From: Cyanophora paradoxa CCMP329 | Taxonomy: Eukaryota; Plantae; Glaucophyta | NCBI GenBank assembly: GCA_004431415.1 | Contig: QPMI01000072.1 | Coordinates: 50,113-114,112 of the forward strand | Reading direction: 5' to 3' | DNA: 64,000 nucleotides | Part shown: positions 10,200-62,988 of the stretch, piece after piece | How the letters are laid out: every line of letters begins with the position of its first letter | Position numbering within the stretch: position 1 is the first letter of the stretch | Notes under the pieces: model-generated | The model's input: the letters and a program-made list of their open reading frames with translations, nothing else | What the model was told of the DNA's origin: nothing | The model's database searches: none | Program-made: the position numbers and the translations under genes

Positions 10200-10435
10200 T
10201 ATACACGCAAATTGACGCAATTGCAACTTGCAACTTCAGTTGCAAGCTTTTTAAGTTTGCGAGTTGAATATTAAATTCAGCAGCACGTTCAATGCACAGT
10301 GCGTACATTGAAGTTGATTGAACATTTACATGTGTTCATATCAACTTCATAATCCATTTGCTTCACAAATAAATTAATGTTCAGTCACTGAGTGTTCAGT
10401 GTTCACTGTTCACCAGTAGTAGTCTAGTACTAGTA

Positions 10436-22720: not shown

Positions 22721-23063
22721 ATGGCAGAATCCTCGCAGGTGCGCGCAGAATCCCTGTCTCCTGACGCGTTGCTGATGAGTGTGCAGGAAGGAAGTCCTGA
22801 TGTTGGCCAGAAGGTGGCCGCCCTTGAGAACATTGTTCGCAGCCTGCAGGAGCGGGCCGACGCGGCAGAGAAGCGGGCCGAAGCCGCAGAGAAGCGGGCC
22901 GAGGGCGAAAGACGGCGGGCCGAAGCTGCAGCGAAGCGGGCTCAGGGCGAAAGACAGCGGGCCGAGGCCGCAGAGGAGCGGGCCCAGGGCGAAAGACAGC
23001 GGGCCGAGGGCGAAAGACAGCGGGCCGAGGCCGCAGCGAAAGAGATCGACCGCTTGGCGAAGG
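22721..23063 (+). CDS. Exon encoding heptad coiled-coil repeats (AEAAEKR / AQGERQR), copy A; probably a gene fragment
   Basis: ORF MAESSQVR...AEAAAKEIDRLAK followed by a gtgaga donor; 21-nt tandem units. Confidence 0.45.
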
Positions 23064-23825
23064 TGAGAGTGTGCGCCCCAGCTTCGTCTCGGTTGCGCGT
23101 GCATCTTATCTGCCGATGCAGAACCCCCTCGCCTTCCTCTTCCCTCGAAAATCCGTCCCTGACGAATGCCGGGCTCTCCTGCGCTCTTGACAGGGGCGGC
23201 GTCTTCTGGCCGGCTTGACCCTGATCTGGGGTGTGTGTTCGGTGCTCGTGGGCTACGTCGGCATCGGTGGCCGGGCGATGGGCAGTCTTGGCCCCTCGAA
23301 TTCATCCTCCTTGAATTGTGTAGTTTCCTTCTTCTCTGTTTTCGCGGCACGTAGAACTTGGAGAGGTCTGTTCGACTTCAACCTGCAATCTTGTGTAGAC
23401 CTGGTGACGCTTACAATTTTAGCAATTCTCTTCGGGTTTTCTTTCACGCATTTCGTGGTCGATGAGAAGGCGTTGGCTTTAGCAACAGCGACATCCTTGG
23501 TGATGAACGCAAGGTTGTTACTCCTGTTTGAGATTTTTCTGAGAACCCCCGGGCCAACCTTGCCCACCAACCGCCCAGTTGAGTCCGAACAGCTGCCTCG
23601 GCCTCTGACCGATTCTGTGAGCGTGTTTAATCCAGCAAGGTAGTAAGCTTGTAAAGTCAATTGCAGACGGTGCGCCCTGCCAGCCCGGCCAGCCCCGGGC
23701 CCCGCTACTCCTCGATTTGGTCGTGGGGCGAGCCGTGCATGCCAACTTTGGGCCAAGATGTACATGTGGCCACATACATGGCCATGGGGGCGTGCACGTG
23801 GGGACAGGGCCCACCTCGGTCCCTC

Positions 23826-26800: not shown

Positions 26801-27500
26801 AGGGTCCCGGCAGCGCAGCGCGGTTCTCGAAACCGTCGTCCTCCGCCGCCTCTCCCGCAGCGCGGGCCAGGATCCAGGCGTCAAGCGGGCCCAGCGCCGC
26901 GGCCAGGCGGCCCGCCCCGTCGAGCCGCTCGGCGGCCGCGAGGACGAGTGCGGAGGCGGCGGCGGCGGCGGCCGGCTCCAGATCGTCGAGGCCGCGGGAG
27001 AGGAGGTGAAAGAGCAGATCGCCCCCCAGGGCCACCTCCCAGAGGCCCGGCGGCGCCGGCCCATCCAGCAGCGCGTTTCGCAGGCGCCCGTAGGCCGCGG
27101 CCCGCACGCGCCCGTGCGGGAAGGACAGAGCTGCAAGGACCGCCTCCGCGGCCGCCGCCGGGTCATCCCGCTGCGCCTCGCCGGCGGCCCGCAGGAGCGC
27201 GTCCAGGACGGGTACCGCCCTCTCCGGCTGGTACTGGAGGCCGTGCAGCCACTCGCGGGCCCGCGCGATGGGCGCGCGCTGCGGTCCCTCGTCCAACGCC
27301 GCGGATTCGCGGGCCGCCGCCAGGACGCGCCGGCCGTACTCCATCTCCTGCAGTGCGCGTTGGGCACAGCTAGCTGCACGTAGGGCGGAGCAGGAGGCGG
27401 CAGCGCACGTCGACCGAGGCCGGGCCGAGGCGGCGGAGGACCAGGAGGAGCGCGTCATGCAGCTGAGGGCGGGCCGCCCCAACGTACTCGTCTGCCGGCG
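23826..27500 (-). pseudogene. Partial rotatin duplicate B (matches about 31760-35352)
   Basis: Collinear high-identity copy of central rotatin exons and introns; no N- or C-terminus. Confidence 0.85.
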
Positions 27501-28060
27501 CTTCGGTCCTCGTTGCGCGATGAGATCCAGCGGGCGACGGGCGATGACAGTGGGCGGATGACGCCGTATCGATCGTAGAAGGGTCCGGACGCCGCCACGC
27601 CGTCGGCAGGGGCCGCCGGGCGGCCTGCAGCTGCTCAGACGCCCGACAGCCATCGCCGGCGCCGCCGCCAACATGCAGAGGCGCCGGCTCAGGCACGGCG
27701 GGCTGGGCCGCCTGGGCGCTTCGCTGGGCGCTTGCCTGATCGACGTACAAAAGACTACCAGAGGTAAGGACGCAGAAATGCGGCCAATAAGAACGATCAA
27801 CGTCTGACGTTACCCATGACGAGCTCGAGCGAGGCCTCGCCAGGTGCTAGGTGCTTTGTGTATGTACCCCAAGCCAGTTATCTTTACATTGTACCCGCCT
27901 GCGGTTCTCCCACAGCTGTCCTTTTGCTTGCGCTCCGCCGCTGTCATCATTTCCCGCCAACTGCAAATTGGGCTGACAAGTAAACAGGAGCGTCCACCAG
28001 ATAGCCGACGCTTCCGAAAAGTAGCTCCTCGTATTCGAAGTTGGGCGCAGTTCTCAGAAT

Positions 28061-28403
28061 ATGGCAGAATCCTCGCAGGTGCGCGCAGAATCCCTGTCTC
28101 CTGACACGTTGCTGATGAGTGTGCAGGAAGGAAGTCCTGATGTTGGCCAGAAGGTGGCCGCCCTTGAGAACATTGTTCGCAGCCTGCAGGAGCGGGCCGA
28201 CGCGGCAGAGAAGCGGGCCGAGGGCGAAAGACAGCGGGCCGAAGCCGCAGAGAAGCGGGCCGAGGGCGAAAGACGGCGGGCCGAAGCTGCAGCGAAGCGG
28301 GCTCAGGGCGAAAGACAGCGGGCCGAGGCCGCAGAGGAGCGGGCCCAGGGCGAAAGACAGCGGGCCGAGGCCGCAGCGAAAGAGATCGACCGCTTGGCGA
28401 AGG
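28061..28403 (+). CDS. Heptad coiled-coil exon, copy B; probably a gene fragment
   Basis: Near-identical to 22721-23063 with repeat units in a different order; followed by short cag/gtgcg-bounded exons up to about 28900. Confidence 0.45.
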
Positions 28404-29537
28404 TGAGAGTGTGCGCCCCAGCTTCGTCTCGGTTGCGCGTGCATCTTATCTGCCGATGCAGAACCCCCTCGCCTTCCTCTTCCCTCGAAAATCCGTCCCT
28501 GACGAATGCCGGGCTCTCCTGCGCTCTTGACAGGGGCGGCGTCAGGCCGGGAGCTGGCCCCGCCGCCGCCTGTGCGCCCTACCCCTCCCCTTGCCGCCGC
28601 ACCCCTCTGACAGCCCGCCCCCCCGCAGACCGCGATCTCTGCTCCCTCTCCCAGCAGGTGGTGCGCCGTACCCCCTCTCACATCTCGTACCCCCGCCCAC
28701 GCCGCCGCAGCTGCTTGGGGCGCGCATGGCGGCGGCCGACCTGGCGCTCCTACGGCCCCTCTCCGCCGCCGCCGAGCGCCCGAGGGCCCTCCTTGCGGGG
28801 CGCCGCGGTGCGGCGCCGAGCGCCGCCGCCCTCGCCACTGCCGCGCGGGAGGCGGCCGCGGCGCCCCGGCGCAGGCTGCGCTGCTCCGCGCCCTCCTCCC
28901 TGTCAGCCGGCGGGCGCGGCGGACGGGGCGGAGGCGCGGCGGGCGGCCGCGCGGCTCGTCGGGCGGGGCGGATCCGGGAGGCACGGCGGGTGGCGGCGCG
29001 GCGCGCAGGGCATATTGTCTCATTCGAAATCCCCGCAGGGGGGGGGGGGGTCTTCTGGCTGGCTTGACCCTGATCTGGGGTGTGCGCACAGAGCTCGTAG
29101 GCTATGTCGGCATCGGTGGTCGGGAGATGGGCAGTCTTGGCCCCTCGAATTCCTCCTCATTGAATTGTGTCGTTTCCTTCTTCTCTGTTTTCGCGGCACG
29201 TAGAACTTGGAGAGGTCTGTTCGACTTCAACCTGCAATCTACTGTAGACCTGGTGATACTTGCAGTGATTGCAATTCTCTTCGGTTAACACTTGCAATGA
29301 TCATGATAGCAAATGCACACTGTTCCCACGAGGGGGCAGGCGCGTTAGCTCGTAAGGCTCCGAGGCTCACGTTCACGTGCGGACGAGAGGGGGTCGCGGG
29401 TGCACTTGCCGCGCCGCTGCGAGGGACGACGTCACGCTCGAAGGCCGGAGATCAATTGCACATGCCGCAGTGCACGACCTAGAGAACCCGCCAAATCTAA
29501 CTGAACGCAGCGACCGGCCGCCGCCCCGCGCCTGGGC

Positions 29538-32500
29538 TCAGGCGGCGGCGGCGGAGCGGGCGTCGAGCAGGTCGATGAGCACCGAAACGCTCTCCAGCGC
29601 CGCCGCCGCCGCCGCCTCCTCCTCCTCCTCCGCCCCCTCGCCGCCCCCGCGCCGCCCCCCGCGGGCATCGCGCAGCAGCGCCCGCCCCTCCCCGCCGGCC
29701 CCCTCCCCGCCCTCCTCCTCCTCCTCCTCCTCCTCCTCGCGCAGGGCGGCGGCGGCGGGCCGCTGCGACAGCTCCGCCTCGAGGGCGAGGAGGGTCCGCC
29801 CCACGCCGGCGCCCTTCAGCGCCACCTTCACCTGAGTGGATAAGACGGGTGAGACGCCGCTCGGAGCTTCAGATCTGAGGCGGGGCGGGCGGGGCCCGGG
29901 CGTGCCTTCTGGTTGTTGTAGACAAGGGCCCAGAGGGCACCGGCCGCGAGGGCGCAGAGGCGCGCGCTGCCGCCCCGCACCATCGCCAGCAGCCGCGGCA
30001 GCGCCATCTCTGAGGGGGGGTAGAGGAAGAAGAAGTCAGAAGAGGTGGGGATGGGGTGGGGGGGAAGGAACGAGGGAGGGGTACGGGCCGGGGGCGAGGA
30101 TGTGGGGCTTGGCCTCCTGAAGGAACGCGAGGTTGCGGAGCAGGAGGGCGGCCCCCGCCCGCAGCGCGAGCCGCAGCGCCGCCGGCGCCCCGCGCCGCTC
30201 CTCCAGCAGCTCCACCGCGTGCCCCACCAGCCCTGCGGGGGGAGAGGGGTACGCCGTCAGCGGGGCGAACGAAGCGGGGGGGGGGGGCGGGGCTTGGGGT
30301 ACCCGGGGTGCGGACGATGGCGAGCTGGCCCTCGTGGGAGAAGGCTAAGTTGCCGAGGAAGTGGAGGAGGGCCGCCTGCCTCGCGGCGGCCGCCGGCACG
30401 CCCTCCCCGCCCCCCGCCGCCACCGACGAGGCCGAGAGCGACTCCGGAGGGGCGCCGGGGGCGCCGGGGCGGCGGCGGCGGCGGCGACGCGGGGGGCGCG
30501 CTCGCGGGCGAGGCGGTCGAGGGCGGCGGCGCAGTCGGCGAGGAAGGCCGTGCGCGCGAGGGCGGCGCGGAACTCGGGCACGAGGGCCATCGAGGCGAGC
30601 GCCGCGAAGGCCGCCCGGTGCGCCGCCACGCCGAGCCGCGCCCGCCCGCGAGCTGCAGCAGCAGCGCCGCCGCCGAGGGCGCCGCCGGGCTCGGCCGCGC
30701 CGCCGACGCGGAGGAGTGGAGCAGCAGCGCCCGCGTCGCCTCGGGGCAGCGCGCCGCGAGGTTCGCCACCAGGCCCAGCAGCTCCACCTGGGGGGTGGAG
30801 TCGGATCAGATCGGTCGCTCAGATCAGATCAGATCAGATCAGATCTGAGCGGACCTGGAGGGCCTCGCCCTCGCGGGCGGCGAGGGGCCAGAGCCGCTCG
30901 AGCAGCGCGGAGACGCGGAGGGCGAGGAGGGCGGCCTTGGCCTCCTGGGAGCCGGCCGCGAGGTTCTTGAGGAGGGCGAGCGAGAGCACGAGCTCCGCGA
31001 CGGCCGCCCCGTGCCGCAGCGCCCCCTCGCCGCCCCACTCGCCGCCCCCGCCGCCCCCGCCGGGGCCCAGCGACGAGGCCACCGCGTGCGCCTCCTCGGC
31101 CGCCGCGATGAGCGCGGCCGGCAGGCCCGCCTCGAGCGCCGCCCGCGTGCCCGTGCGCGAGGCCGCCAGCACGTTCACCAGCGCCCCCGCGATGGCGGCG
31201 CGGGTGCGGAGCTGCCCGCGGTCCGGAGCCGCCCCGTCCAGCGCGCTCCGCGACGCCCCGTAGAGCCGCACCAGCCGCCCCGAGAGCCGCGCGCCAAGCT
31301 CCCCGCCGCCTCTGCCGCCGCCCCGCCGCCGCCCCCGCCCGCGCTCTCGGACGACGGCTGAGGCCGGGGCCGAGGCTCCGCCTCCTCGGCCTCCTTTCCG
31401 TCGAGGACGCGGCGCATGGCCGCGTCGGCCCCGGCGGTGAGCGTCGCGACGAGCTGGCAGGCCGCCAGCTGCGCCCGCGGGTCGCGCCCCTCCAGAGCCG
31501 CGCAGGCCCCGCGGAGCAGCGCGGGGGCCGCCGCCGGGCCGGCCTCGGCGAGGGCGGCGCCGGCCTCCGGGCAGCGGTGGAGCAGGTTCCCGACGAGGGC
31601 CGCCAGCGGCGCGCGCGCCTCGGCCCCGCACGCGGCCTCGCCCAGCGCCCCCGCCGCGCTCGCCAGCAGCGGCGTCCGCTGCGCCACCGCCGCCCGCAGC
31701 GCCGCCCGCCCCGCCGGAGCGCCTCGTCCGCCAGCGCCGCCAGCGCCGCGCGGAGCCCGCCGAGCTCGGCCGCGGCGGCGGCGGCGGGGCCGGCCCACGG
31801 GACGGAGGCGGCGAGGGGCGAGTCGCGGAGGAGCGGCGTCGCGGCGGCGCGGCGGTGGGCCTCGGCGAGGCGCCGCTCGTGCGTGGCGCGCTGCAGGAGG
31901 GCCGCCAGGGGCCCCAGCGCGCCGGCGCGCCCTCCGCCGCGAGGAGCGCGTCGGCGGCGGGGCGGTGGCCGGCGAGGAGGAGCGAGGAGAGGAGCGCCGC
32001 CGCCGCGCGGCAGAGCCCGGGCGTCCCCGCCTCGTCCCGCACCGCCTCCAGGCACTGCGGCCCGCGTCGGCGCGGCCCCGAGAGGCGGGGCGGGGCGGGG
32101 CGGCGCGGCGCGCACCACCTCGGTCAGGGAAGCGAGTCGAGGGCGGCGCGCAGCTCGGCGGGGCGGCGGGCCCGCCGGGGACCCACGAGGCCGCCACGTA
32201 GTTCGCGACGCACGCGAGCGCCTCCTGCCGCACCGCGGCGCACTCGCGCGCGTCCCCGGCGCGGGCCGCCGCGGCGCGGAGCCAGCCCGGGGCCGGACCC
32301 TCCTCCCCGTCGGGCCGGTGCGCGGCGGCGAGCGCCGGCCAGGCGTCGGGCCAGCGGGCGAGCTGGGCGGCGACGGCGCCGGCCAGGGCCCGCACGCGGG
32401 CCTCGCGGTCCGACAGGAACGCGAGCGCGGCGCCCAGGGCCGCCCCGCCGCACTCCGCGACGAGCGCGCCTGGGCTCCGGGAGGCCGCGTCCCGCTCCGG

Positions 32501-35500
32501 GGCCGCCGCGAGGGCCGCCAGGACCGCCCCAGCGCCGCCCGCACGAGGTGCTTGTCGCGGAAGGCGTCCCCGTGGGCCGGCGCGTCCCGCGCCAGCAGCG
32601 TCAGCGCCCCGCGCAGCACCGCCGGCGCCGCCGTCCACCACCGGTCGGCGCGCCAGGCCGCCCCCGCCGCCAGAGCCGCCAGCAGCTCGGCTGCGCGCAC
32701 GCGGGCCGCGGCGGCGGTCGGGGAGGCGGCGGCGGGGCGGAGGGCGGCGGCGGCGGGGCCAGGAAGCCGTCCGCGAGGGCAGCGGCGAGCGGCGAGTCGT
32801 TGAGCAGGAGGGCGGCGGGGCGGGGCGTCCCGCGGGCGCCGGGGTCGCAAGCAGCCTTCGAAGGAAGACGAGGGCCGCCAGCTGGAGCCGCTCGCGCGCG
32901 GCGTGCGCGGCCGAGGCGGCCGCCAGGCGCGCCCGCGCCGACTCGTGGGCCGGCGAGGCGGCGGGGAGGGGCCGGCCCGGCGCCAGCAGCGGGACCAGCG
33001 TGTCGCACGCCGCAGAGAGAATGAGCCGGGCCTTGGAGGCCGGCAGGCCGGCCGCCGGGTCGCAAAGGCTCCACAGAACGCGAAGCAGGGCGGCCAAGAG
33101 CTCCTCGTCGGCCGGCGTGCTCGGTGCCACGCTCAGGAAGCTGCGGGCCGGTCAGCGGCCGAGCGGCGGGGCGCACGGCACGAAAGGCGAACCGGCGGAA
33201 GGCGTCGGGCCACGACGCGGCGGCGAAGGCGCGGGCGGCGGCGGGGTCGGCCTCGCAGAGGGCCCGAGGCGCCCCAGCGCCGCCGCGCAGTCGGCGTGCG
33301 CCGCGGCGCCGGCGGCCGCGTCCAGCGCCGTGCGGACGGCCGAGGGCGGGTGCAGGCGCGCCATGGCCAGGGTCCCGTCCCGCTCCTCGGGCGTGAGGGC
33401 CCCGCGACGGCCTCGCCGGCCGCCGCCGCCGCCGATCGGAGGGCGCCGGGAAGGCCCCGACCCGCTCCAGGTGCCAGGCCGCCGCGAGGGAGCGCGCGAG
33501 GCGCGGGCTCGCGGGGGGTACGGCGCCCTCCGCGGGGCCCCGCAGCGCACACGGCCGCACGGCGAAGGCGAATCGGAAGGCCGCCGCGAGGGGCGCCGGG
33601 AGGGGCGGGCCGGCCCAGGGCCCCGGGGCGTCGGACCCCTCCAGGGCCTCCCGGGCGAAGAGGGCGGGGGTACGGCATCCGCGGGCCCTCGCCTCCTCGT
33701 CATCCGAGAAGAGGGCCCACGCCAGGGCGGCCGAGGCCTCGCGCCGTACCCCCGTGTGCGGGTGGAACACGTCTACGGAGGAAAGCCGGTTAAAAAAGGC
33801 AGGAAAGGGGACAGGGGAGAGGCGCGCACAGGGTACGAGGGCACGAAGGGACTCGGGCTCGTCTCTGAGGGTACGGCGTACCCCCGGGAGAAGCCGGCAC
33901 AGCGAGGAAAGGACCGAGGCTGCGGGGCCCTCGGCGCCGGCCCGATCGCCGCCCCGCGCGGCCGCGGCCGCCTCACGCTGCGATCAGAGCATAAGCAGGG
34001 GTAGTGGGAAGCAGGGAGTGGGCACGAGCGCACGAGGTCAGCGAGGGCCGAGCGGAAGAGAGACTCGTCCGCAAAGGCGGCGCTGAAGCGCGGGTCTGCG
34101 GGCGGGGAGCGTGAGCGAGCGAGAGGGGTACATAGACGCCGGCGGGGGCGGGCGTACCGCGTAGGGCGAGCGCGAGCTGCTCGGCGGCCGCGCGGCGCAG
34201 CTCGGGATCGAGGGCCGCCCCCTGGTAGATCCGCTGGAGCTTGGCGAACTCGGAAGCCTGGAACGAGCCCGCCGGCCCGCGCGACGCCGGTCCCTCGTCG
34301 AACTCGTCGCCGGGGGCGTCCGCGTCGAGAAGAGAGCCGAAGGGGTCCCTCAGGCGCCGCCCCAGCCGCACGCGGTCCTGTGGGGGTACAGGATCAAAAA
34401 CGCGGGGCGGGAGGGGGGTACGGGAGCGCACGTGGCCGTCCAGAGCGTCGAGGAAGTCGAGGGCCGCCGGCTCCGCGAGCCGCAGCGCTTCTGCCGCCTC
34501 CCGCCGGGCCCTGCCGCAAGGAATGGGTATACAGAACAGGAACGATAGGGTGGAGATGCGGGGCGCTCGCACCACTCGGCGCCGGAGAAGAGCGCGCGGA
34601 TGAGATGGCGGAGCCGGTCCGGGGCGGAGAGGCGCTGCTCCAGGGCGCGCGCGAGGCGCCCGAAAGGTCCCGGCAGCGCCGCGCGGTTCTCGAAGCCGTC
34701 GTCCTCCGCCGCCTCTCCCGCGGCGCGGGCCAGGATCCAGGCGTCAAGCGGGCCGAGTGCCGCGGCCAGGCAACCCGCCCCGTCGAGCCGCTCGGCGGCC
34801 GCGAGGACGAGTGCGGAGGCGGCGGAGGCGGCGGCCGGCTCCAGATCGTCGAGGCCGCGGGAGAGGAGGTGGAAGAGCAGATCGCCCCCCAGGGCCACCT
34901 CCCAGAGGCCCAACGGCGCCGGCCCATCCAGCAGCGCGTTTCGCAGGCGCCCGTAGGCCGCGGCCCGCACGCGCCCGTGCGGGAAGGACAGAGCTGCAAG
35001 GACCGCCTCCGCGGCCGCCGCCGGGTCGTCCCGCTGCGCCTCGCCGGCGGCCCGCAGGAGCGCGTCCAGGACGGGTACCGCCCGCTCCGGCTGGTACTGG
35101 AGGCCGTGCAGCCACTCGCGGGCCCGCGCGATGGGCGCGCGCTGCGGTCCCTCGTCCAACGCCGCGGACTCGCGGGCCGCCGCCAGGACGCGCCGGCCGT
35201 ACTCCATCTCCTGCGGTGCGCGTTTGGCACAGCGGGGCGGAGCAGGAGGCCGCGGCGCACGTCGACCGAGGCCGGGTCGAGCCTGCGGAGGACCGGGAGG
35301 AGCGCGCCGCGCAGCTGAGGCCTGGCCGCCCCCACGTACTCGTCTGCCGGCGGGCGCCCGCGTAAGGCCGACGCGGAGCGGAGAAAGCGAGCGAGCGGAC
35401 CGAGGGCTAGAGCCGAGTAGAGGCGCAGCAGGTCGCCCGGCGCCGCCTCGGTCTGCCAGCGCTCCGGGACGGCCGAGAGCAGGTCCAGCGTCCAGTGGAC

Positions 35501-37142
35501 GGCCGGCGCAAGGAGCGGCTCGGCCGCCACCGCCGCCGCCCCGTCCCCGGCGCCGTGCTCCGCGATGGCCTCGGCTGCGGCCACCAGGTACCCGCGCACA
35601 CGCGTCGCCTCGTCGCCCGCCTCTCGCTCGCCGCAACCGGGGGCCAGGCCCCGAAGCCGGGGCACCGCAAAAGGAAGAAGGGCACGGAGGGCAGCAAGAG
35701 CCGGGGCGAGGAGGGCGGCCTGTCGGAGGGCCGGGAGGACGGCGGAGATGCAGAGGTGGGCGGCGGTCTCGAGGCCCATGGCGGGCTCGCCGCCGGCGGA
35801 GGGCGGCGGCGCAGCCAGGAGAGCCTCCACTGACTGCTGTGCGATGCGCTTGCTGGAGATGGCTCGCTGCGAGGCCGCACGGCGAACGCTGGGGTAGTGT
35901 AGCTCCTCGGCCGCCCCGGCCGTGGCGTCGCGCGGCCCCTCCTCGCCCTCCCGCGCCGGGAGGCGGTACCCCGGCTCGCACAGGAAGCGCAGGCTGGCGG
36001 CCCAGCCGCGCGCAACCGCCTCCACACACCGCAGCGCCTCCGTCCGCACCGCCGCCGCCGCCTCCGCGCCGGCCGCGGCGCCGCCGCCCGTGCGCAGCGT
36101 CGCGAGGATAGCCTGCGGCGCGGGCGCGTCAGCGGCGCCGAGAAGCGGGCGGGGCGCGGGGTGGAGGGCGGACCGAGAGCAGATCGGCGCCGCAAGGCTG
36201 GAGCAGGACTTCGGAGGGGAGCGCGGGCAACACGTGGGCGCGGAGGGCCGCGAGGGCGTCCGCCACGAGGCCCGAGTCGGTCATCTTTAGGCGCACCTCC
36301 CACTCGAGGAGCCACTGGTCGTCCGCCCGCGTCGTGTGGACGTGCGGGTACGTCAGCCGGTCCTGCGTTCCCACGCGCTCCGAACGCCGGCCGGCGGCGC
36401 CCGCCACCGTCCTTTCGACGAAGCGCGGATCGTACTTCGGCGCCGTCGCGGCGAGCACTTCGTAGATGCCCTCCCGCCCGCTGCTCGCCGCTCCGGGGGT
36501 GAAGAGCGCTGCCGCTGACGTGCTGCTGAACGGAGCTATGGGCGACGCCGCGTCGTGAAGCGGTAACGTGGGCTCGGGGACGGGCTGCGGCGGCTGCGGC
36601 GCTGTGCTCGCGCGGCCGCGCGGAGAAGCAGAGGACGAAGAGGTCGGCCAGCCATCGGCGCGGCTGGTCGCCGAAGTAGCCGCCGCCACGGGCCTCGGCT
36701 CCTGCTCGCCCTTCGGACGCGCCTCGGGCGCGAACGCTGACATGGGCGACCGGAGGAGGAGCGCCTGGATGGCGTCCAGCCGCCCCTGCAGCTCCGGCGG
36801 CGCCCCCGCACGGTACTCGTCAAAGAACTGCATCCCTCCTATCCTAATGAAGCCGGCGGCACCGGCTGGCTCCTGCGTGAGGGCCAGTGAGGAAGCGGCT
36901 CGCGCATGGCGGCGACCGCGGGACCGCACCGCCGCGAGCAATTCGATGAGCCTTAGCGCCTCGGTCTCACAGGTGCAGTCGTCGTGGTTGAACCACTCCA
37001 GGAGGTGCACGAAGGCCGCATCGAGCTGGACGAGCTCCGACGCGGCGGCGAGCCCGTTCTCGAGCTTGAAAAGCAGGCTCTTGAGTGCGCGCACCCTGAC
37101 GTCGCGCAGCTGGTGCGCCAGCTTCGCCACCAGCGCCTCCAT
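29538..37142 (-). CDS. RTTN: Rotatin (ARM/HEAT-repeat centriole/basal-body protein); several apparent 1-nt indels in the central GC-rich exons
   Basis: N-terminus MEALVAKLAHQLRDVRVRALKSLLFKLENGL...FVHLLEWFN matches the rotatin N-terminal signature (KLxHxLxxxRxRALKS...HLLEWFN) as I recall it; long Ala/Leu helical repeats; last exon ends LIDLLDARSAAAA* at 29538. Confidence 0.88.
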
Positions 37143-37629
37143 CGCGGCGGCTCTGGCGGGAACTGGACAGAAACCGCGTACCCGTGCCGACCACGCCCGC
37201 TACTCCTCCTACGCCCCGGCGAGCTCACGGTCGCCAGCGCGGACTGCACACAAGCATGTTGTCGTCTCGGGCACGTTTCTGGCAGCCCCGCACCGGACCG
37301 ACCCGCCTTCGTGCGATTTCCAGCAGGCGGGTGGCGCGCGTCACGGCATTCCAAGTCGCGCGAGAGAGCACGACACTCGCTCCAGATCGAGCAGCGGAAA
37401 GCAGCAATTAGAGACGTGCACTCGGCGAGCTCACTCGTCTTTACTCAAGCTCAGCCGCGGACGACTCGAGCTCCAACTATAGTTGCAGCGCGCGAGGCCG
37501 CACCGACGCCGACACCGCTACTGCTGCCGATAACTTGGCGATAAGCAGCTGAACCGGAGAGAGACTCTGAGAGAGCAAGCTCCTGCAGCTCCTGTTCCAC
37601 GCGCAATCGCACCGGATCGAATTCCAGGC
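37143..37629. promoter_or_regulatory. Short divergent intergenic region (candidate bidirectional promoter) between rotatin and cysteine synthase
   Basis: Head-to-head ATGs at 37142 (-) and 37630 (+), 487 bp between them; no specific motif identified. Confidence 0.45.
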
Positions 37630-50300: not shown

Positions 50301-50952
50301 CGGCGGCGGGACCGCGGGGGCGGCGGGGTGGGCCGAGGCCGGCGCTTGAGGCGCGGGGGCCCGCGCCGGGCGCAGAAGGCGGCGAGGCCGGGAGAAGTAG
50401 GAGGGCGGCAGGAGCGAGAGCGGGAGATCTCTGGAGCGGGGGTGGCAGGTGGCGGGGGCGGGGGCGGGCTGAACCGCAGGGGGCGGGGAGACCCCCCCAC
50501 CTTCCTCCCCGGCGGGGGAGACCGCAGGGGGAGCGGAGAGGGTCCGCGGAGGCGGGGGGGCGCGGGGGCGGGCGGGGGGCGAGCTGGGAGCACCGGCGCT
50601 GCGGCGGCAGCGGCGGCGGCGGCCCTCGAATCGGATCCGACGCCCGCCTCGAGGGACGGGGTCGGCCTCGGACGGCTCGGGCGGCCCCGGGGGCGGGCTC
50701 GCGGTCGCGCTGGGCGGAGCCGGAGGGGCGTGCCCCGGCCGCCCGGCGGGCACGCCGAAGGGGAGGGCGAAGGGAACGGGGCGGGCTCGGGGCGGGTGCG
50801 GGCAAGGGGAGCAAGGGGAGGGGCTCCGGTCAGGTGGAGGGCGCGGCCGCCCGAGGAGGGCCGGTGGCGGGCACGGGGGCCGGCGGCCCGGGGAGAGGCG
50901 GGCCGCGGGGCCGCCCGGCGCCGTCCTCCGGCGCCATCCTCCGGGAAAGGCG

Positions 50953-52444
50953 CGGGAAAGGGCGGGGACGCGCCGGCGCGCATGCGCACCCGCTCGCCCG
51001 CGCCGGTGCTGGGGCGGGCGGCGCCGTCTTCCGCGCCGGCGCCCCGGCGAGGGAGGCACGAGGCGCGCGCAGGGCGGGCGCGATGTGGCGGCCGGCGCCC
51101 CTCTCTGGCGGCGCGGGCGGGCGGCAGACCTCAGGAGACGATAGAGCGGCGGGCATGGCCGGCGCACCGATGGCCGACGGCGCACCAGCCGCGCGCCCGC
51201 TCCAGCGCCCCTCCCCGCCCCCGCCCGCCCGCCGCCCGCCCCGGTCGCCGCCAGCGCCACGCGGGGGAGCGCGGGCGCCGCGTCGCGGACCGTCCCTGCT
51301 GCGCGCTCGGCGGTCAGGCGCCGCGGGCGGGATCTCACGTGACGGGCGTGGAGCGCTGCCGGCGACGAGGCGGGCGGGGCGGCGCCGTCAGGAGCGGGCG
51401 AGGGAGCCGTGGCGGCGGGGAGGGGCGGGGCGGGGCGGGGCGGCGGGCGCGAGGGCGCACCTCCATGAAGACGCGGTGGAAGCAGTCGGGGGCCGCCGCC
51501 GCCGACACGCGCTCAGACGGCGGGAGGCGGTCCGGCGGCCGCGGGCGCACCTTCTTCGGAGGCGGGGCGGAGGAGGGCGGAGGAGACAATCTCCCTCTCT
51601 CGCTCGCTCGCGCGCGCGCAGTGCACGGCAGACGGCCAGAAGGAGCTGCGGCAGTGCGCGACCAGAAACTCCGATCGTGTTTCGATCAACGAACCCGGCG
51701 GCCAGAATCCCGCGCTGGCCGCCGGAGCCTGGGCATGGGAGCCGCAGCTGCAGCTGCAGGCTGCCAGCGTCCGACGGTCCCGATCGCCGGAGCCGGCGAC
51801 CAGAACTTCGCTTCTGATTCGGCAGAGTGCTCTGCTCGCCATGGATTACAGAAGTACTACGTATACTGAACGAGGTGCTCCGCCACCGACCCGCCAGTGG
51901 GCCGCCACCGTGGCCGGGGCTATGCTCCACCATGGCCTCGGGCCTCGGCTCCGGCTGCAGCTGCGCAGGCGCAGCTGCGTCTTGATGACTGCAGCTGCAG
52001 CTGCGCCTGCGTCCTGATAAGGATCGCTCTGCAAGGCTGGCGCATGTTGAAGTGGACAGGCAGTAGTGCACCGGTCCGGGACGCCGTTTATAGGTATATG
52101 CAGCTCACAGACCCGCCCGCCCGCCATGAAAGCAGCAGAGGCCCGCGGCGCGACCGTACCCCGGTGCTTCGGCGTGGCCGTACCCCCGCGCTTCGGTGAA
52201 TCGGCATTCATCGCGGCAGGTGCGAAGCCGACGGGTTTCTGGCATCGCTCATGTCGTTCGCTCATTGCTTGCTTGTACCGGTGCGCAGCTCCACAGGGCA
52301 GCGGGCGAGCGGCCAGCAGATCTAGACAGCACGCGACCGGCGAGGATTTCTGACCGGGCGGGCTCCGTCGGTTCCGAAAGCTCGGATCTGTTGCGTCAAG
52401 GCGATCCGTCGAAGGTGCGCTCCTCCGGGCGGGTGCAGAACCCC
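50953..52444 (+). repeat. About 1.5-kb direct repeat, copy 1
   Basis: Collinear with 57567-59094 (paired ORFs 52066/58716 and 51513/58168 are nearly identical), with scattered substitutions and indels. Confidence 0.92.
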
Positions 52445-52952
52445 GGTTGCTCGCTAGTTGCCGCTGGGCGGATTACGCCGGTCTAGAATCTACGCGTACG
52501 AATCGCTTCGAATTCGCTCTGGGCCGCACGGGTCGCCTAGAAGCGTGCGAGGGGCCGCACTGATCCCACCAAGCGACGCGGCGGGCGCGCGGACGTCGGC
52601 TAAGATGCGGGGCGAGTTATCGATATCGGTGCCGGGCCTGTGGGGGGGGCCCCACGCTCCGGCGTCGCTTGCTGCCTCGTTCGCCAACCCACGAACGGGG
52701 GGAGGGGGGGAGGACCCAGCGCGCGCCTGGGCGTGGGGGTGCAATCTCCCATAGGCCGCCGTTCGCTCCCCCGAGCCGAGACTCGGGCGGGGCGGGGCGG
52801 CCGGTAAAGGCTGAGCCCGGCGCGCGCGTGCACCGCCCCCTGCGGGAGGGGCTCAGCGCGGGTCGGGCGGCCCCCCGCAGGCTGGGGACCCGCCGGGCGG
52901 GGCGGGGGCGCGCTCCCCGCGGCGCGCTTCTGCCGCTGACCGCCCCGCAGGC

Positions 52953-55026
52953 ATGGGCAAGGGGTGGATCCCGAAGGAGGGGAAGCTGGACCTGGAAGTA
53001 GGGTTGCCGTGGTGAAGTTTCACATCGCGTAAACTTCACTACTTCAGTGAAGTTTCAGTTTCAGTTTCACCAGGCCTGCTGAAACTTCACGTGAACTTCA
53101 GGCTCCCATACAAAACTTCTTGCTGGAGCCCCTCGCGCTGAAGGCGGAAGCGGCAGCGGTTCAAGGTCTTAAACAGTACCTCCAGCCTGTAAACACATTT
53201 TATGCTTATCTGACAGCAGAAATGGGTCACTCTCGCACTTGGTTGGCCCACATGTGGGTGTACCCCCAAATGGCAGCAGTACTTCTCCCTCCAAATCTCG
53301 CATATCTTAGCAGAGCTCACATTTACAAAACATCTACAACAGTCCAGGAGGCTTCTACGCACGCTTTTGAGTCGTTTGGAGGGCAAATCTCGCAAGCGTG
53401 TGTAGTGAAACATGCAAAAATAGTGGAACTTCACGTGAAACGTGTGAAGTTTCACGGTAGTTTCAGTTTCACCCCGGGCTTGTGAAACTTCACGTGAAGC
53501 GGCAACCCTACCTGGAAGAGGAGGGGCGGACGGAGTGGCCGGCGGCGGAGATCGCGGCGGCGGGGCCCGAGAACATCCGCGCGCTCGACCTCGACGGGAA
53601 CATGCTCACGCGCATCCCGGGCGCCGAGCTCGCGAAGCTGACGAACCTGGAGGTGCTGTACTTGCGCAACAACCAGCTGACGGCGCTGCCGCCAGAGATC
53701 GGCCGCCTCGCCGCCCTGAAGATACTGAGCGTGGACAACAACCGGCTGACGGCGCTGCCGCCGGAGATCGGCTGCCTCGCCGCCCTGCGGGAGCTGTACG
53801 TGCGCGACAACCAGCTGACGGCGCTGCCGCCGGAGATCGGCCGCATCGCCGCCCTGCGGGAGCTGTGGGTGCACGGCAACCCCGTCGTGGACTCGTGGCC
53901 CGAGCCCGTCCGCCGCGCCGTGAACGATAACAGTGGCTTGTTTGGTGGTGAAGCCCAGTGCGCCGCCGTCGTGCCCTACCTCCGCTCCCTCCCCGCCCCC
54001 GCCCCCGCGGTGCGCCCCGCGCCCAGCCCCCGCGCCCCGCCCCTCACCCCTCGGCTTCCCCCGCGCACTCACCCGCCACCGCAGCCCGCCGCCGCTGCCC
54101 CACGCCCCGCCGCGCCCGCCCCACGCGCCCCTCCGGCCCCTGGTCCGTGCTTCCTTGCCCGTGCCCCTACGTACCCCCACCCGTGCTTCCCCTCCCCCGA
54201 CGCGAGCCCGCCTCGCAGCTCCGCCGCAGGCGGCCCCGCGCCCCCCCCCGGCGGGGGACGTGCGCTCCTGGAGCGAGGACGACGTCGTCGCGTGGGTCCG
54301 CTCCCGCGGCCCCCTCGCCCAGTGCGCCGCCCTCCGCCATCAGGCTCTCGGTCCCGCCCGCCGGCCTGAGGCTGCGGCAGGTTCGCGGGGGCCTTTCAGT
54401 TCACGAACGGCGTCGCCCTCCTCGCCCTCGGCCACAAGGACCTGGAGGAGATGGGCGTCGCGCACCACGGCGCACGCCACCGCCTCCTCGCCGAGATCGC
54501 CACCCTCGGCCACCCCGCGCTCGCACCCGGCCACAGCCCCACGCCCGGCTACAACAACCCCGCCCAGCGCGTCCCGCCCCTTCCCCCAGGCTACGAGTAC
54601 CACGTCTTGTGCGCAGTCGCTTACCTGTTCAGGCCCCGCGCCCGGTCGGCGAGCTCGCTGACGGCCCGGCCGCGGGGCGCAGCATCACGTACCGGCGGCT
54701 GGGGGGGAGGAACTACCTCGCGTCGCTCGTCCGCGAGGCCCTCGAGAAGCGCGGGTTCGACTCTCCCACACGCCTCTTTCAATTTGCCCTTGTCCGCTCC
54801 TCTGAGGCGCGCGGCGCGGGCCCCGCAGCTACAGGGTCTTCTTCGACACGCAGAGCCTGCAGGGCGGCGTCTTCGACAGCGCAATCCTCCACTCCCTCCG
54901 CGCCTCCTGCGTCGACGGTCCGGCCCCGCCCGCGTTGGAAACTTCTCCAGGCTGTCCCTGAGCCCGCCCCGCAGTCTTCATCCTCGTGGACGGCACCCTC
55001 GAGCGCTGCAAGGACCTCGAGGACTG
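52953..55026 (+). pseudogene. LRR-SAM-TIR gene with SARM1-like TIR; MITE inserted near the N-terminus and no exon found after the TIR DW motif
   Basis: LRR LEVLYLRNNQLTALPPEIGRL (about 4 repeats); SAM WSEDDVVAWVRS..Q/FAGAF..NGVALLALGHKDLEEMGV..HGARHRLLAEI; TIR YHVF/ITYRRLGG..LASLVREALEKRG/YRVFFDTQSLQGGVFDSAILHSL../VFILVDGTLERCKDLEDW; splice phases consistent. Confidence 0.82.
52999..53510. mobile_element. hAT-type MITE, 512 bp, 11-bp perfect TIR, 8-bp TSD
   Basis: cctggaag|TAGGGTTGCCG ... CGGCAACCCTA|cctggaag (TSD 52991-52998 and 53511-53518); many subterminal gtgaagtttca/tgaaacttcac repeats; removal restores the frame KLDLEEEGRTEW. Confidence 0.95.
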
Positions 55027-57566
55027 GTGCGCGGGCTGTGGGTGGGGGGCGGGGCGGGGGGGCGGGCGGGCGGCGTCTGGGGGCCTAGGTTAAGCGGCTA
55101 GGGCAGCGGCTAGGAGGGGCTCGAAGCTCGAGGCGAAGCTCGGGGCCCGGGAGGGGGGGTAGGGGAGGAGAGAGAAGCTGAGAAGGGATCAGCTCGAGAA
55201 GGGAGCTCGAGACGGGATGAGCCGGAGCTCGAAGGCGGCGGAGGGCGCCGGGCTCGATCGCGAGGCCCGGGCAGCCTCGGGCCTGCGGGCTCGAGGGGCG
55301 GCGTCCCCTGCCCGGCCGGCCGGGCGGCGCTCGAGCCTCGGGCCTCGGCCGGCGCGGGCTGCAGGTACCTGCGGGCTTCCGGGAGCCCGGGGGCCTCCCG
55401 GCGCCTTGAGGCCGCGCGCGATGTGAGGGGAGGCGCGCCGCGCGGGGGCATCAAGGTCGGGGCGGGGATTCATGGTGGGAAAGGCAGCGGAGAGCGCTAT
55501 AGCTAGACACGCAGCGGAGTCGGAGGCTCAAGGCGGTGTCCCCTCTAGCCGCTCGTCTAGCCGTCCCTCTAGCCGTCTAGCCGTCCCGGAGAGCGCGCAG
55601 CGCTCGCGCGCCGGGTACGCGCGAGGGGAGGAGGGGCGGCCACAGGTCCGGGCGAGATCGGACGCGGGCGGCGGGGCCGGGGCGGGGCCGCGGGGCCGGG
55701 CGCCCTCTTCGCAGCGGCGGGAAGGGCGCCTCGCGTCGGGGGGGAGCGGGGGGAGAAGGGGGGGTACCCGTGCCCGGCCAGGCGCCCCCAGAGACTCGCC
55801 GGGCCTCGAGCTGCGGGGGGCGGGGAGGAGGAAGGCCGCGGCGAGGGGCGAGCTCGAGGCGCCCGGCCCGCCCGCGCCCTGAGGCCCGATGGCAGCTCCA
55901 GCGCTCTCTCGTACATTAGAGAACTTCTCTCAATATCAGTGATGGCTTGCAAAGCTCTAGCTATCTACTTGGGCCTGATACTCGAGATCTACCACCACGC
56001 CTAAGCCACCTTCGGCTACATCTCTCCGCGCGTCGCGCGCCTGTACGGTCCAACCCTCGAGCTCTGGACTCTCCGGGATCCCCTCCTCGGCTCTTCATGA
56101 TCAGAAGCTCGGCGGAGGCGGGGGTCGGCCTCAGCGCCGAGCCAACCCCGCCTTGGGGGAAGGAGGCGGGGAGGGGAGGGGGGGAGGGTACGAGGGAGGG
56201 AGCAACGCCTGCGGAGCGGGGGTACGGGAGCTCGGGCTCGGAGGGTCGAGGTGGGCGGCGAGGCCAGGCCGCTCAGGAACGGATGAGGGACGGCAGACAG
56301 GAGGAGGGGGAGGAGGACACCAGGCCGCTCAGGAGGAGGAGGGGCGGGCGGGCGGCCGGCGGCCCGCGGCGGAACGGAGCCGAAGGGGCGGGCCAAGAGA
56401 CAGCCCGGGCGGAGCTGTGGGGGGCGGGGGGCCCGGGGCGGCCCGGGGAGGAGAGCGGGCGGGGCGGAGAGGGGCGCGGGGAAGGGCGGGCGGAAGAAGA
56501 AGACCCCCGAAGAAGATCCCCGAAGAAGAAGAGGGGGAGGAGAAGAAGAGGGGGAGGAGAGGGGCGGCCGGCCGGCCGGCGGCCCGCGGCGGATCCGGCG
56601 CGGGGCTGAAGGGGCGGGCCGAAACACAGCCCGGGAGGAGCTGTGGAGGGCGCTCGGGGGGCGCGGGGGGCGCGGGGAGGGGAGCGGGCGGGGCGGAGAG
56701 GGGCGCGGGGAAGGGCGGGCGGAAAAGAAGACCCGGGGGGGAAGGGACGGGGGAAGAAGAAGGAGGGGCGGGGGGGGGAGAAGGAGAGGGGAGGGGTCGG
56801 GCGGGGAGGCGGGAGGGAGGGCGAGACGGGGAGCACCGGCGCTGCGGCGCTGGGTGGCGGCCCTCCCATCGATACCCGATCCGATGCGGCGCTGAGGAGG
56901 AGAAGGCGAGGGCCGGGGCCCGCGGGCGGGGCCGATGATAAGGGGCGGGGCGGGGCTATTTATAAGGGGGCGGGGCGGGGCGGCCCTCCCGCGCGAGGAG
57001 CGCCTCCAGCGCGCGCCGGGGCACCGCTGCGGGGCACCCCGTGGGCGGCGTGCGGCGGGGGCGGGCGGGGCGGGGCGCACCGCTGCCCCCCTCCTCCCGC
57101 TCCAGGGAGGCCGGGGAGCCCGGGCCGCCGGCGAGGCCGGCCCCGGCGCCCCCTGAGAGCCACCGGTGCCCCCCGCGGGGCCGGCGGCGGCGCCCACCGC
57201 TCGCCATGCTCCGCCGCCCGCCGCCCGCCGCCCCGGCCTGAGGGGCCGCCGCCTCTGCGAGCAACGCGCTCGCGAGGCGCCCGGAAGGCGCCTCCGGCCC
57301 AGCCGCCGGCCGCGCACCTTCGAGGCGGGCGGCCGGGGAGAGCTCGATCGAAGGCGGGGGCGGGGCGGCGTTGAGGCGGCGCCGCCGCAGGAGCGGCGAG
57401 GGGAGGGCGGGGGGGAGCGCCCGGGCCCGGGCGGGAAGGGGGAGGGGCGGCCCCCGTGAGGGCCCTTTGAGCTCGGCTCGAGGCCGCGGAGGAGCGTTCC
57501 TCCGCAGCGGGCGCGGCGTCCACCGTTCCTCTCGAGGGGAACGCTCCCCAGCTGCCCGGTCAGGCT

Positions 57567-59094
57567 CGGGAGAGGGCGGGGGCGCGCCGGCGCGCATGCG
57601 CACCCGCTCGCCCGCGCCGGCGCTGGGGCGGGCGGCGCCGTCCTCCGCGCTGGCGCCCCGGCGAGGGAGGCACGAGGCGCGCGCAGGGCGGGCGCGATGT
57701 GGCGGCCGGCGCCCCTCTCTGGCGGCGCGGGCGGGCGGCAGACCTCAGGAGACGATAGAGCGGCGGGCGTGGCCGGCGCACCGATGGCCGACGGCGCACC
57801 AGCCGCGCGCCCGCTCCAGCGCCCCTCCCCCGCCCCGCCCGCCCGCCGCCCGCCCCGGTCGCCGCCAGCGCCACGCGGGGGAGCGCGGGCGCCGCGTCGC
57901 GGACCGTCCCTGCTGCGCGCTCGGCGGTCAGGCGCCGGCGGGTGGGTGCGCGGTGCGCGCCGGCGGGCGGGATCTCACGTGACGGGCGTGGAGCGCTGCC
58001 GGCGACGAGGCGGGCGGGGCGGCGCCGTCAGGAGCGGGCGGGGGAGCCGTGGCGGCGGGGCGGGGCGGGGCGGGGCGGGGCGGGCGGGGCGGCGGGCGCG
58101 AGGGCGCACGTCCATGAAGACGCGGTGGAAGCAGTCGGGCGCCGCCGCCGCCGCCGCCGACACGCGCTCAGACGGCGGGAGGCGGCCCGGCGGCCGCGGG
58201 CGCACCTTCTTCAGAGGCGGGGCGGAGGAGGGCGGAGGAGACAATCTCCCTCTCTCGCTCGCTCGCGCGCGCGCAGTGCACGGCAGGCGGCCAGAAGGAG
58301 CTGCGGCAGTGCGCGACCAGAAACTCCGATCGTGTTTCGATCGACGAACCCGGCGGCCAGAATCCCGCGCTGGCTGACGGAGCCTGGGCATGGGAGCCGC
58401 AGCTGCAGGCTGCCCGCGTCCGACGGTCCCGATCGCCGGAGCCGGCGACCAGAACTTCGCTGCTGATTCGGCAGAGTGCTCTGCTCGCCATGGATTACAG
58501 AAGTACTACTGAACGAGGAGCGGGCCGACCCGCCAGCCTGGCAGTGGGCCGCCACCGTGGCCGGGGCTATGCTCCACCATGGCCTCGGGCCTCGGCTGCA
58601 CCAGCTGCAGCTGCGCAGGCGCAGCTGCGTCTTGATGGCTGCAGCTGCAGCTGCGCCTGTGTCCTGATCATGATCGCTCTGGAAGGCTGGCGCACGATGA
58701 AGTGGACAGGCAGTAGTGCACCGGTCCGGAACGCCGTTTATAGGTATATGCAGCTCACAGACCCGCCCGCCTGCCAAGAAAGCAGCGGAGGCCCGCGGCG
58801 CAACCGTACCCCGGCGCTTCGGCGCGGCCGTACCCAAGAGCTTCGGTGAATCGGCATTCATCGCGGCAGGTGCGAAGCCGACGGGTTTCTGGCATCGCTC
58901 CTGTCGCTCGCTCACTGCTTGCTTGTACCGACGCGCAGCTCCACAGGGCAGCGGGCGAGCGGCCAGCAGATCTAGACAGCACGCGACCGGTGAGGATTTC
59001 TGACCGGGCGGGCTCCGTCGGTTCCGAAAGCTCGGCTCTGCTGCGTCAAGGCGATCGTTCGAAGGTGCGCTCCTCCGGGCGGGCGCAGAACCCC
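57567..59094 (+). repeat. About 1.5-kb direct repeat, copy 2; overlaps the predicted 3' end of the adjacent minus-strand gene
   Basis: Collinear with 50953-52444. Confidence 0.92.
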
Positions 59095-62400: not shown

Positions 62401-62988
62401 CGCAGCCCGTCGCCCGGCGCGCGCTATAGCTACCGGAATTCCGTGCGTCGCCAGGGCCCGGCCGCTTAGCGCGCCCGCCTCACTCCAAAGCGCGCAGCGG
62501 TGGCTCACGCGGAAGCGATCAGACGCGCGGCGCTGGCGGCAGTTACGGCAGTTACGGCAGTTACGGCATGGCGGCAGTTAAGGCAGTTACGGCAGTCGCG
62601 GGCACGCCGTCTAACCGACGGCGCCGAGCCGGCGCAGCAACATCCCGGCGGAGCACGGTACGCTGCTCTGGCTACGGAAGTAGGTAGGCTGTGAGGGACG
62701 GGGCGGGGCGGGCGCAGCCCGTCGCCCGGCGCGCGCTATAGCTACCGGAATTCCGTGCGTCGCCAGGGCCCGGCCGCTTAGCGCGCCCGCCTCACTCCAA
62801 AGCGCGCAGCGGTGGCTCACGCGGAAGCGATCAGACGCGCGGCGCTGGCGGCAGTTACGGCAGTTACGGCAGTTACGGCATGGCGGCAGTTAAGGCAGTT
62901 ACGGCAGTCGCGGGCACGCCGTCTAACCGACGGCGCCGAGCCGGCGCAGCAACATCCCGGCGGAGCACGGTACGCTGCTCTGGCTACG
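62401..62988 (+). repeat. Tandem duplication (276-bp unit, 312-bp period) containing a GGCAGTTAC array
   Basis: 62401-62676 matches 62713-62988; each has ggcagttac x3, then ggcagttaa and ggcagttac. Confidence 0.92.

What the first reader, a model, noticed from the sequence alone, without database searches (positions are those of the whole stretch)
52953..55026. LRR-SAM-TIR protein: SARM1-like effector module with an LRR in place of the ARM domain
Seen: hand splicing gives LRRs, a Pro-rich linker, one SAM domain and a TIR with FITYRR..GG..LASL, VFFD..SL..G.F and L.RC...DW motifs. The SAM and TIR are hidden in the ORF track by short introns. Established: SARM1 is ARM-SAM-SAM-TIR, SAM oligomerisation drives TIR NAD+ cleavage, and its TIR has FISYRR..G..LASL and DWVHKE with the catalytic Glu. 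Inference: a cytosolic sensor(LRR)-oligomeriser(SAM)-NADase(TIR) receptor with no NB-ARC/NACHT and no TM helix, which could be an undescribed innate-immune or cell-death receptor type in a unicellular eukaryote. This copy looks damaged, so an intact paralogue may be the functional one.
Basis: partly seen in the sequence, partly recalled or inferred. Interest (0 to 1): 0.8.

Follow-up and report, generated by a model that had tools for sequence, protein, structure and literature searches.

The report
Broken algal LRR-SAM-TIR receptor copy
This is a real, transcribed but doubly broken copy from a gene family of the alga Cyanophora paradoxa that joins variable leucine-rich repeats to the NAD-cutting module of the human nerve-death enzyme SARM1; the family looks undescribed and immune-like, but this copy cannot make the enzyme.

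Summary
Observation confirmed. The locus is Cyanophora paradoxa public gene model tig00000282_g23853: five LRR units, a Pro/Ala linker, one SAM and the first half of a SARM1-type TIR, over short GT-AG introns. RNA contigs show the SAM intron spliced directly, and contig-length arithmetic fits the TIR introns. The copy has two lesions. A 512-bp hAT-like MITE (11-bp terminal repeats, 8-bp target duplication) sits at codon 16. The last TIR exon(s), with the W638/E642 equivalents and the CaaX tail of the closest paralogues, are absent; transcripts splice into a cryptic exon that stops after nine codons. At least seven paralogue models keep DW-V/L-R-K/R-E, and their SAM-TIR has SARM1 as best PDB match (1e-32; model TM about 0.9 to SARM1 TIR). 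Among the best 150 SAM-TIR relatives in 1.84 billion representatives, only Cyanophora proteins carry LRRs. The same LRR cassette is also fused to other TIR types and to RING domains, and its concave face is hypervariable. No paper describing the architecture was found; SARM1-like TIRs in protists are known. The scan has noted this family before on at least eight other loci of this genome. New variant of a known kind; enzyme and immune roles untested.

The parts
50948..52444 (+). 1.5-kb upstream block holding the probable promoter and 5'UTR exon (exon ends 52414, GT donor at 52415); a 92%-identical orphan copy lies at 57562-59094
   Evidence: self-BLAST; RNA loose ends before 52949 match the end of this block (table 7; these reads differ at a few letters, so probably from paralogues); paralogue models P0122 and P0008 begin with mis-translated pieces of it
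52415..52950 (+). 5'UTR intron (536 nt, GT..AG, CTGAC branch-like site)
52953..52998 (+). Start codon and first 15 codons of the LRR N-cap
   Evidence: 93% identical to the N-termini of P0004 and P0014
52999..53510 (.). 512-bp non-autonomous hAT-like element (MITE): 11-bp perfect terminal inverted repeats beginning TAGGG, sub-terminal repeats, 49% GC; 8-bp target duplication at 52991-52998 and 53511-53518; in-frame stop at 53013
   Evidence: RNA depth 0 across it in three RNA-type runs, DNA run covers it; hAT assignment rests on TSD length and TIR start (own knowledge)
53511..54009 (+). LRR exon: rest of N-cap, five LRR units (three canonical 23-aa), C-cap
   Evidence: Pfam LRR_4 3.6e-29; 69-nt period x3.3; one RNA contig matches 53676-53768 exactly
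54085..54142 (+). Pro/Ala linker exon (flanking introns 54010-54084 and 54143-54218 inferred, not seen in the listed RNA joints)
   Evidence: same junctions as public model P0002; frame after acceptor 54218 matches P0125/P0126
54219..54321 (+). End of linker and first SAM helix
   Evidence: 76-83% identical to P0125/P0126; intron 54322-54380 spliced GT..AG in three RNA-type runs, not in the DNA run (table 5)
54381..54608 (+). Rest of the single SAM domain, spacer, start of TIR strand A
   Evidence: SAM_1 2.9e-5; RNA contig covers exactly 54381-54608 with 0 differences and runs on at both ends
54683..54754 (+). TIR exon 1 (ITYRR, helix A)
   Evidence: junction arithmetic
54829..54917 (+). TIR exon 2 (strand B, BB loop, helix B)
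54975..55026 (+). TIR exon 3 (strand C to the D637 equivalent); last homologous exon
   Evidence: 94% identical to P0125; nothing homologous follows in the window
55193..55497 (+). Cryptic terminal exon after a 166-nt intron (55027-55192); reading stops at TGA 55218-55220 after nine codons; extends at least to 55497
   Evidence: RNA contig of run X1 lies on 55192-55497 with 0 differences from its letter 233, equal to 20+72+89+52 letters of the upstream exons; X5 starts at the same acceptor.

Best explanation
The locus is a decaying but still transcribed member of a Cyanophora-specific, birth-and-death family of sensor-effector proteins. In intact members (e.g. P0125, P0126, P0028, P0034) a mobile LRR cassette with a hypervariable concave face takes the place of SARM1's ARM domain in front of a SARM1-derived SAM-TIR module. 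The likely mechanism is that ligand binding by the LRR clusters the protein, helped by SAM-SAM contacts and in some members by a CaaX lipid anchor, so that the TIRs assemble and cleave NAD+ to give a death or alarm signal. Shown here: architecture, splicing, SARM1 kinship, conserved catalytic Glu in paralogues, LRR variability, cassette shuffling, and the two lesions. Inferred: NADase activity, oligomerisation, ligand sensing, immune role. This copy lacks about half the TIR, including the catalytic helix, and has a MITE in its first coding exon, so it makes no active enzyme.
For: Splicing and expression. Seven paralogue models with DW-V/L-R-K/R-E, aligned to SARM1 D637-W638...E642. Best PDB sequence hit SARM1, E 1e-32. 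AF2 model of P0126 SAM-TIR pLDDT 89.8, TM 0.90-0.92 and rmsd 1.8 A to SARM1 TIR, well ahead of plant and TLR TIRs. SAM is of the SARM1 first-SAM type. 13 Cyanophora SARM1-type TIRs form one clade, SH-aLRT 98, quick tree. Concave LRR positions carry 2.9-3.4 bits of entropy against under 1.6 for the conserved LRR back (positions 10-23), 66 distinct concave words in 75 repeats. The N-cap is 90% identical to P0003, whose TIR is unrelated (24%), and 70-73% to LRR-RING models. No catalytic exon in the window.
Against: No biochemical or genetic data. LRR concave faces vary in most LRR families, and no dN/dS test was possible because paralogue DNA could not be fetched. One SAM may not build the SARM1 octamer, and this subfamily's SAM is diverged (33-37 bits against 62-67 for the other subfamily). 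A conserved Glu does not guarantee activity: only 4 of 29 unicellular-eukaryote TIRs chosen for that Glu gave a detectable cADPR isomer (doi 10.64898/2026.04.20.719644). The MITE junctions of this copy were not bridged by any printed DNA contig.
Confidence: 0.6

Rival explanations
1. This copy is not dead but a regulator: the MITE is spliced out as an intron (GT at 52998, in-frame AG at 53520 or 53523) or is absent in some cultures, giving an LRR-SAM protein with a stub of TIR that joins SAM oligomers of intact paralogues and damps or tunes them.
For: Still transcribed and spliced with exact matches; no RNA over the MITE; two in-frame acceptors exist just after it; the frame from LRR to the last TIR exon has no stop or shift; another model, P0060, is LRR-SAM without TIR.
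Against: The printed RNA joints across the MITE skip 520 nt at depth 200-300 and fit paralogues with an empty site, not a 523/526-nt GT-AG splice. GAG acceptors are weak. The terminal exon is cryptic, uses codons rare in the gene (AGA 0 and AGG 2 of 28 Arg codons) and drops the CaaX. Young pseudogenes are often still transcribed.
Confidence: 0.12
2. The family works as non-enzymatic scaffolds or in general signalling or metabolite sensing rather than immunity; the LRRs bind host partners and the SAM-TIR is an adaptor.
For: No immune phenotype is known; most tested unicellular TIRs gave no detectable product; PMC13142454 states there is no evidence yet for TIR-controlled cell death in microeukaryotes.
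Against: The catalytic Glu is invariant across the 37 intact rows aligned; rapid expansion, clustering on a few contigs, cassette shuffling and many decayed copies fit conflict-driven evolution better than housekeeping.
Confidence: 0.22
3. The damage is an assembly artefact, and the real locus is intact.
For: The DNA run holds only 70% of the sampled words, and several upstream positions differ from all laid contigs.
Against: The MITE has perfect terminal repeats and an exact 8-bp target duplication; independent RNA contigs join the last TIR exon to 55193 with 0 differences.
Confidence: 0.06

Closest known systems
SARM1 / TIR-1 / dSarm (ARM-SAM-SAM-TIR NAD+ hydrolase)
   Same: TIR sequence and fold (E 1e-32; TM about 0.9), catalytic W/E motif in intact paralogues, SAM resembling SARM1's first SAM, SAM directly before TIR
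   Different: LRR instead of ARM, one SAM instead of two, multi-copy family with CaaX in some members; this copy lacks the catalytic half
SARM1-like proteins of choanoflagellates, amoebae, green algae, dinoflagellates (Richter et al. doi 10.1101/211789; PMC13142454), and hits in Trimastix and Picozoa
   Same: SARM1-clade TIR in unicellular eukaryotes; many have a single SAM
   Different: none of the 140 or so non-Cyanophora hits carries an LRR; the papers read do not mention Cyanophora
Plant TNL receptors and Toll-like receptors
   Same: LRR sensor coupled to a TIR effector; expanded and variable repertoires
   Different: no NB-ARC/NACHT, LRR is N-terminal and has no signal peptide or transmembrane segment evident by eye (not formally predicted), TIR is SARM1-type rather than plant or TLR type
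Bacterial LRR-TIR proteins (Bacteroidota and others)
   Same: soluble LRR plus TIR_2 without STAND ATPase; nearest Atlas clusters
   Different: no SAM; no introns; lead only, no alignment
hAT-superfamily MITEs
   Same: 8-bp TSD, short TIR beginning TAGGG, sub-terminal repeats, no ORF
   Different: autonomous partner not identified here

Membership tests
SARM1 family | TIR of the SARM1 clade | tested here: met
   best PDB hits by sequence and fold are SARM1/TIR-1 for paralogues P0028 and P0126; this copy's TIR half groups with P0125/P0126
SARM1 family | Catalytic Glu (E642) and W638 in a complete TIR | tested here: not met
   absent in this copy; met in seven paralogue models
SARM1 family | N-terminal ARM domain | tested here: not met
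   LRR instead
SARM1 family | Tandem SAM pair | tested here: not met
   one SAM, first-SAM-like
SARM1 family | SAM-driven oligomer and NADase activity | not testable with these tools
   needs biochemistry
NLR (TNL/STAND) | NB-ARC or NACHT ATPase | tested here: not met
   no such Pfam hit in P0002, P0028, P0034
Toll-like receptor | Signal peptide and transmembrane helix between LRR and TIR | not tested
   no predictor run; the linker is Pro/Ala-rich and holds a SAM
Cyanophora LRR-SAM-TIR family | Shared LRR cassette, SAM and SARM1-type TIR in one spliced gene | tested here: met
   SAM-to-TIR splicing supported by RNA, the LRR-to-SAM joints by frame and homology only
hAT MITE | 8-bp TSD and terminal inverted repeats | tested here: met
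hAT MITE | Cognate hAT transposase elsewhere in the genome | not tested
   genome DNA outside the window not searchable here

The most novel reading that the evidence does not exclude
Cyanophora has an undescribed receptor system in which a shuffled, hypervariable LRR cassette directly controls a SARM1-type SAM-TIR NADase, using SAM clustering (and prenyl anchoring) in place of a STAND ATPase: an independently evolved innate-immune receptor repertoire in a glaucophyte, of which this locus is a freshly inactivated member.
Probability: 0.45. Interest if true: 0.8.

Novelty: new variant of a known kind. Interest (0 to 1): 0.5.

Why it matters
If the intact members are ligand-gated NADases, they would show that the SARM1 SAM-TIR module can be rewired from a metabolite-sensing ARM to a variable pattern-recognition LRR, and would give a direct test of TIR-based immunity or cell death in a unicellular relative of plants, where none is yet shown (PMC13142454). 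This copy adds a snapshot of how the repertoire turns over: transposon insertion plus loss of the catalytic exon while transcription continues. It is not itself the copy to assay.

Tried and rejected
Pfam on single TIR exons: too short, no hit. tblastn of paralogue C-termini against the window: no catalytic exon on either strand. The cryptic exon reads S-R-R-E-L, like the paralogues' V-R-R-E-I; I rejected it as a remnant exon because of rare Arg codons, a 166-nt intron against 57-76 nt for the other internal introns, W replaced by C and an immediate stop, although an RRE at that place occurs in only 0.2% of phases of the region, so it is not fully explained. Acceptor 54229 rejected: it shifts the frame, and the frame from 54218 matches paralogues. 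Both ends of public model P0002 (start spliced into the MITE, tail from about 55830) are unsupported: no RNA over the MITE, and RNA uses acceptor 55192. Paralogue DNA not on record. Word-based searches missed even SARM1, so the big search was used. Paper searches for the architecture or for Cyanophora TIRs found nothing relevant; a search for SARM1 SAM interface mutants found nothing, so no interface claim is made.

Full report
Source and gene model. The window is Cyanophora paradoxa: the LRR exon retrieves EukProt models with tig-style names, one (P0002, tig00000282_g23853) 100% identical, and models of the same set carry the accession EP00741_Cyanophora_paradoxa. On the + strand the gene has an ATG at 52953 after an acceptor at 52950, an LRR exon to 54009, and GT-AG introns at 54010-54084, 54143-54218, 54322-54380, 54609-54682, 54755-54828 and 54918-54974. 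With these the frame is continuous from 53512 to 55026. Exon-wise Pfam gives LRR_4 E 3.6e-29 and SAM_1 E 2.9e-5; the public model adds TIR E 3.8e-5.

Expression and splicing. Four runs were laid at 88% likeness. Three are guessed RNA, and they show the 54322-54380 intron removed while the DNA run does not. An X3 contig matches 54381-54608 with no difference and runs on at both ends, fixing both borders of that 228-nt exon. An X1 contig lies on 55192-55497 with no difference from its letter 233; 233 equals 20 letters of the SAM exon plus the three TIR exons (72+89+52), with one shared G. I infer from this that all TIR introns are spliced as modelled and that the last TIR exon is joined to 55193. 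The two introns in the Pro-rich linker are supported only by frame, by homology to P0125/P0126 and by the public model. Loose RNA ends place a 5'UTR exon ending at 52414, probably read from paralogues.

First lesion. A 512-bp element occupies 52999-53510. It has 11-bp perfect terminal inverted repeats starting TAGGG, sub-terminal repeats, 49% GC and an exact 8-bp target duplication, the anatomy of a hAT-type MITE (own knowledge). Reading in from the ATG stops at 53013. No RNA covers the element. The printed RNA joints skip 520 nt at depth 200-300, against about 12-15 for this copy's own exons, and fit paralogues with an empty site. How this copy's transcript gets past the element is therefore open. 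A GT at 52998 and in-frame AGs at 53520 and 53523 would allow removal as an intron, but no such joint was among the rows printed.

Second lesion. Paralogues continue after the Asp with W-V-R-K/R-E, two more strands, two helices and in some cases a CSVQ tail. Nothing homologous exists in the window. The RNA-supported join gives Cys instead of Trp, eight more codons and a stop at 55218-55220. On the AF2 model of the close paralogue P0126 the TIR spans about residues 98-240 and this copy ends at the equivalent of 171, before the helix holding the invariant Glu. It cannot fold an active TIR.

The family. Searches found at least seven models with LRR, SAM and a TIR that keeps the Glu (P0028, P0034, P0122, P0124, P0125, P0126, P0127). 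The closest to this copy are P0125 (78%) and P0126 (72%) over SAM-TIR, both ending in CSVQ. The SAM-TIR of P0028 has human SARM1 as best solved relative (E 1e-32), with the motif aligned to D637-W638...E642. The P0126 model (pLDDT 89.8) superposes on SARM1 TIR at TM 0.90-0.92, rmsd 1.8 A, ahead of RUN1 and TLR1. The single SAM scores better against a profile of first SAMs of tandem-SAM hits than of second SAMs. In a quick maximum-likelihood tree of 158 TIRs, 13 Cyanophora SARM1-type TIRs form one clade (SH-aLRT 98) and this copy groups with P0125, P0126 and P0132 (95); deeper forks are unresolved, the careful tree did not finish, and the rows were chosen by similarity to a Cyanophora profile, so no donor or direction is claimed.

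The LRR is a mobile cassette. The same N-cap/LRR/C-cap occurs on two other TIR types, on RING domains, on SAM alone and on other tails. This copy's N-cap is 90% identical to P0003, whose TIR shares only 24%, and the mis-modelled N-terminal extension of P0001 is identical in translation to the intron just upstream of this ATG. Repeat number varies from 0 to 8 among models. Over 75 repeats the concave-face positions carry 2.9-3.4 bits of entropy while the conserved back of the repeat carries under 1.6. This is what variable sensors look like, but it is not a selection test.

Novelty. A profile search of 1.84 billion representatives gave 5587 hits at 1e-10; of the best 150, only Cyanophora models carry LRRs. 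Other hits include animal SARM1, a Trimastix SAM-SAM-TIR, a Picozoa single-SAM-TIR, and Cyanophora ZZ-SAM-TIR and TIR-WW proteins. Weaker hits were not seen, so absence elsewhere is not proved. The Atlas returned bacterial LRR-TIR clusters without SAM. SARM1-like sequences are reported from choanoflagellates (doi 10.1101/211789) and from amoebae, green algae and dinoflagellates (PMC13142454). No paper in the library was found on LRR-SAM-TIR or Cyanophora TIR proteins, and most subscription papers are not searched. The scan's own notes list the family at eight or more other loci of this genome; these were leads, and the family was re-derived here.

Mechanism and verdict. For intact members the best reading is LRR sensing, clustering through SAM and in some members a prenyl anchor, TIR assembly and NAD+ cleavage (about 0.6 for the combined reading that the family works this way and this copy is a dead member; every functional step is inferred from SARM1). 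A caution: few unicellular TIRs with the Glu gave a product in a recent screen (4 of 29; doi 10.64898/2026.04.20.719644). Rivals are a non-enzymatic or non-immune role (0.22), a spliced LRR-SAM decoy from this copy (0.12) and assembly error (0.06). The architecture is a new variant of known parts; the locus at hand is a broken example. Interest 0.5.

Noticed in passing
window 57562-59094: 92%-identical second copy of the gene's upstream block, ending just after the same 5'UTR donor (59065) but with no LRR exon behind it: an orphan promoter/5'UTR cassette.
   Followed up: partly
window 55193-55220: The cryptic exon happens to read R-R-E-L at the place of the paralogues' R-R-E-I, with Glu at the catalytic position; such a word occurs in 0.2% of phases of the region. 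Treated as chance but unexplained.
   Followed up: partly
window 52998-53523: The MITE with its target duplication supplies a GT donor and nearby in-frame AG acceptors, so it could behave as an intron (introner-like); not seen among printed RNA joints.
   Followed up: partly
window 20580-35352: Several 0.5-2.7 kb direct duplications at 91-96% identity, e.g. 23821-26501 with 31756-34418, plus 42-nt tandem arrays at 22851-23030 and 28191-28380.
   Followed up: no
window 62401-62988: 312-nt perfect tandem duplication (100%); very recent or an assembly artefact.
   Followed up: no
window 36132-37199 (-): Rotatin N-terminal domain, Pfam RTTN_N E 1e-14.
   Followed up: partly
window 14701-15927 (-): Another LRR-containing frame (LRR_4 E 4e-7), not of the same cassette by self-BLAST.
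   Followed up: partly
window 1-12000: Lower-GC stretch (52-60%) with minus-strand frames at 4580-7833 that have ordinary codon make-up and no Pfam hit.
   Followed up: partly
P0123, P0136, P0137 (Cyanophora models): Other fusions of the same SARM1-type TIR clade: SAM-TIR-second TIR with Gln at the Glu position and CSVQ; ZZ-SAM-TIR; TIR-WW.
   Followed up: partly
P0121 and P0028 (same contig tig00020704): SAM-TIR regions 100% identical in two neighbouring models, one fused to a RING: very recent duplication or a fused gene model.
   Followed up: no
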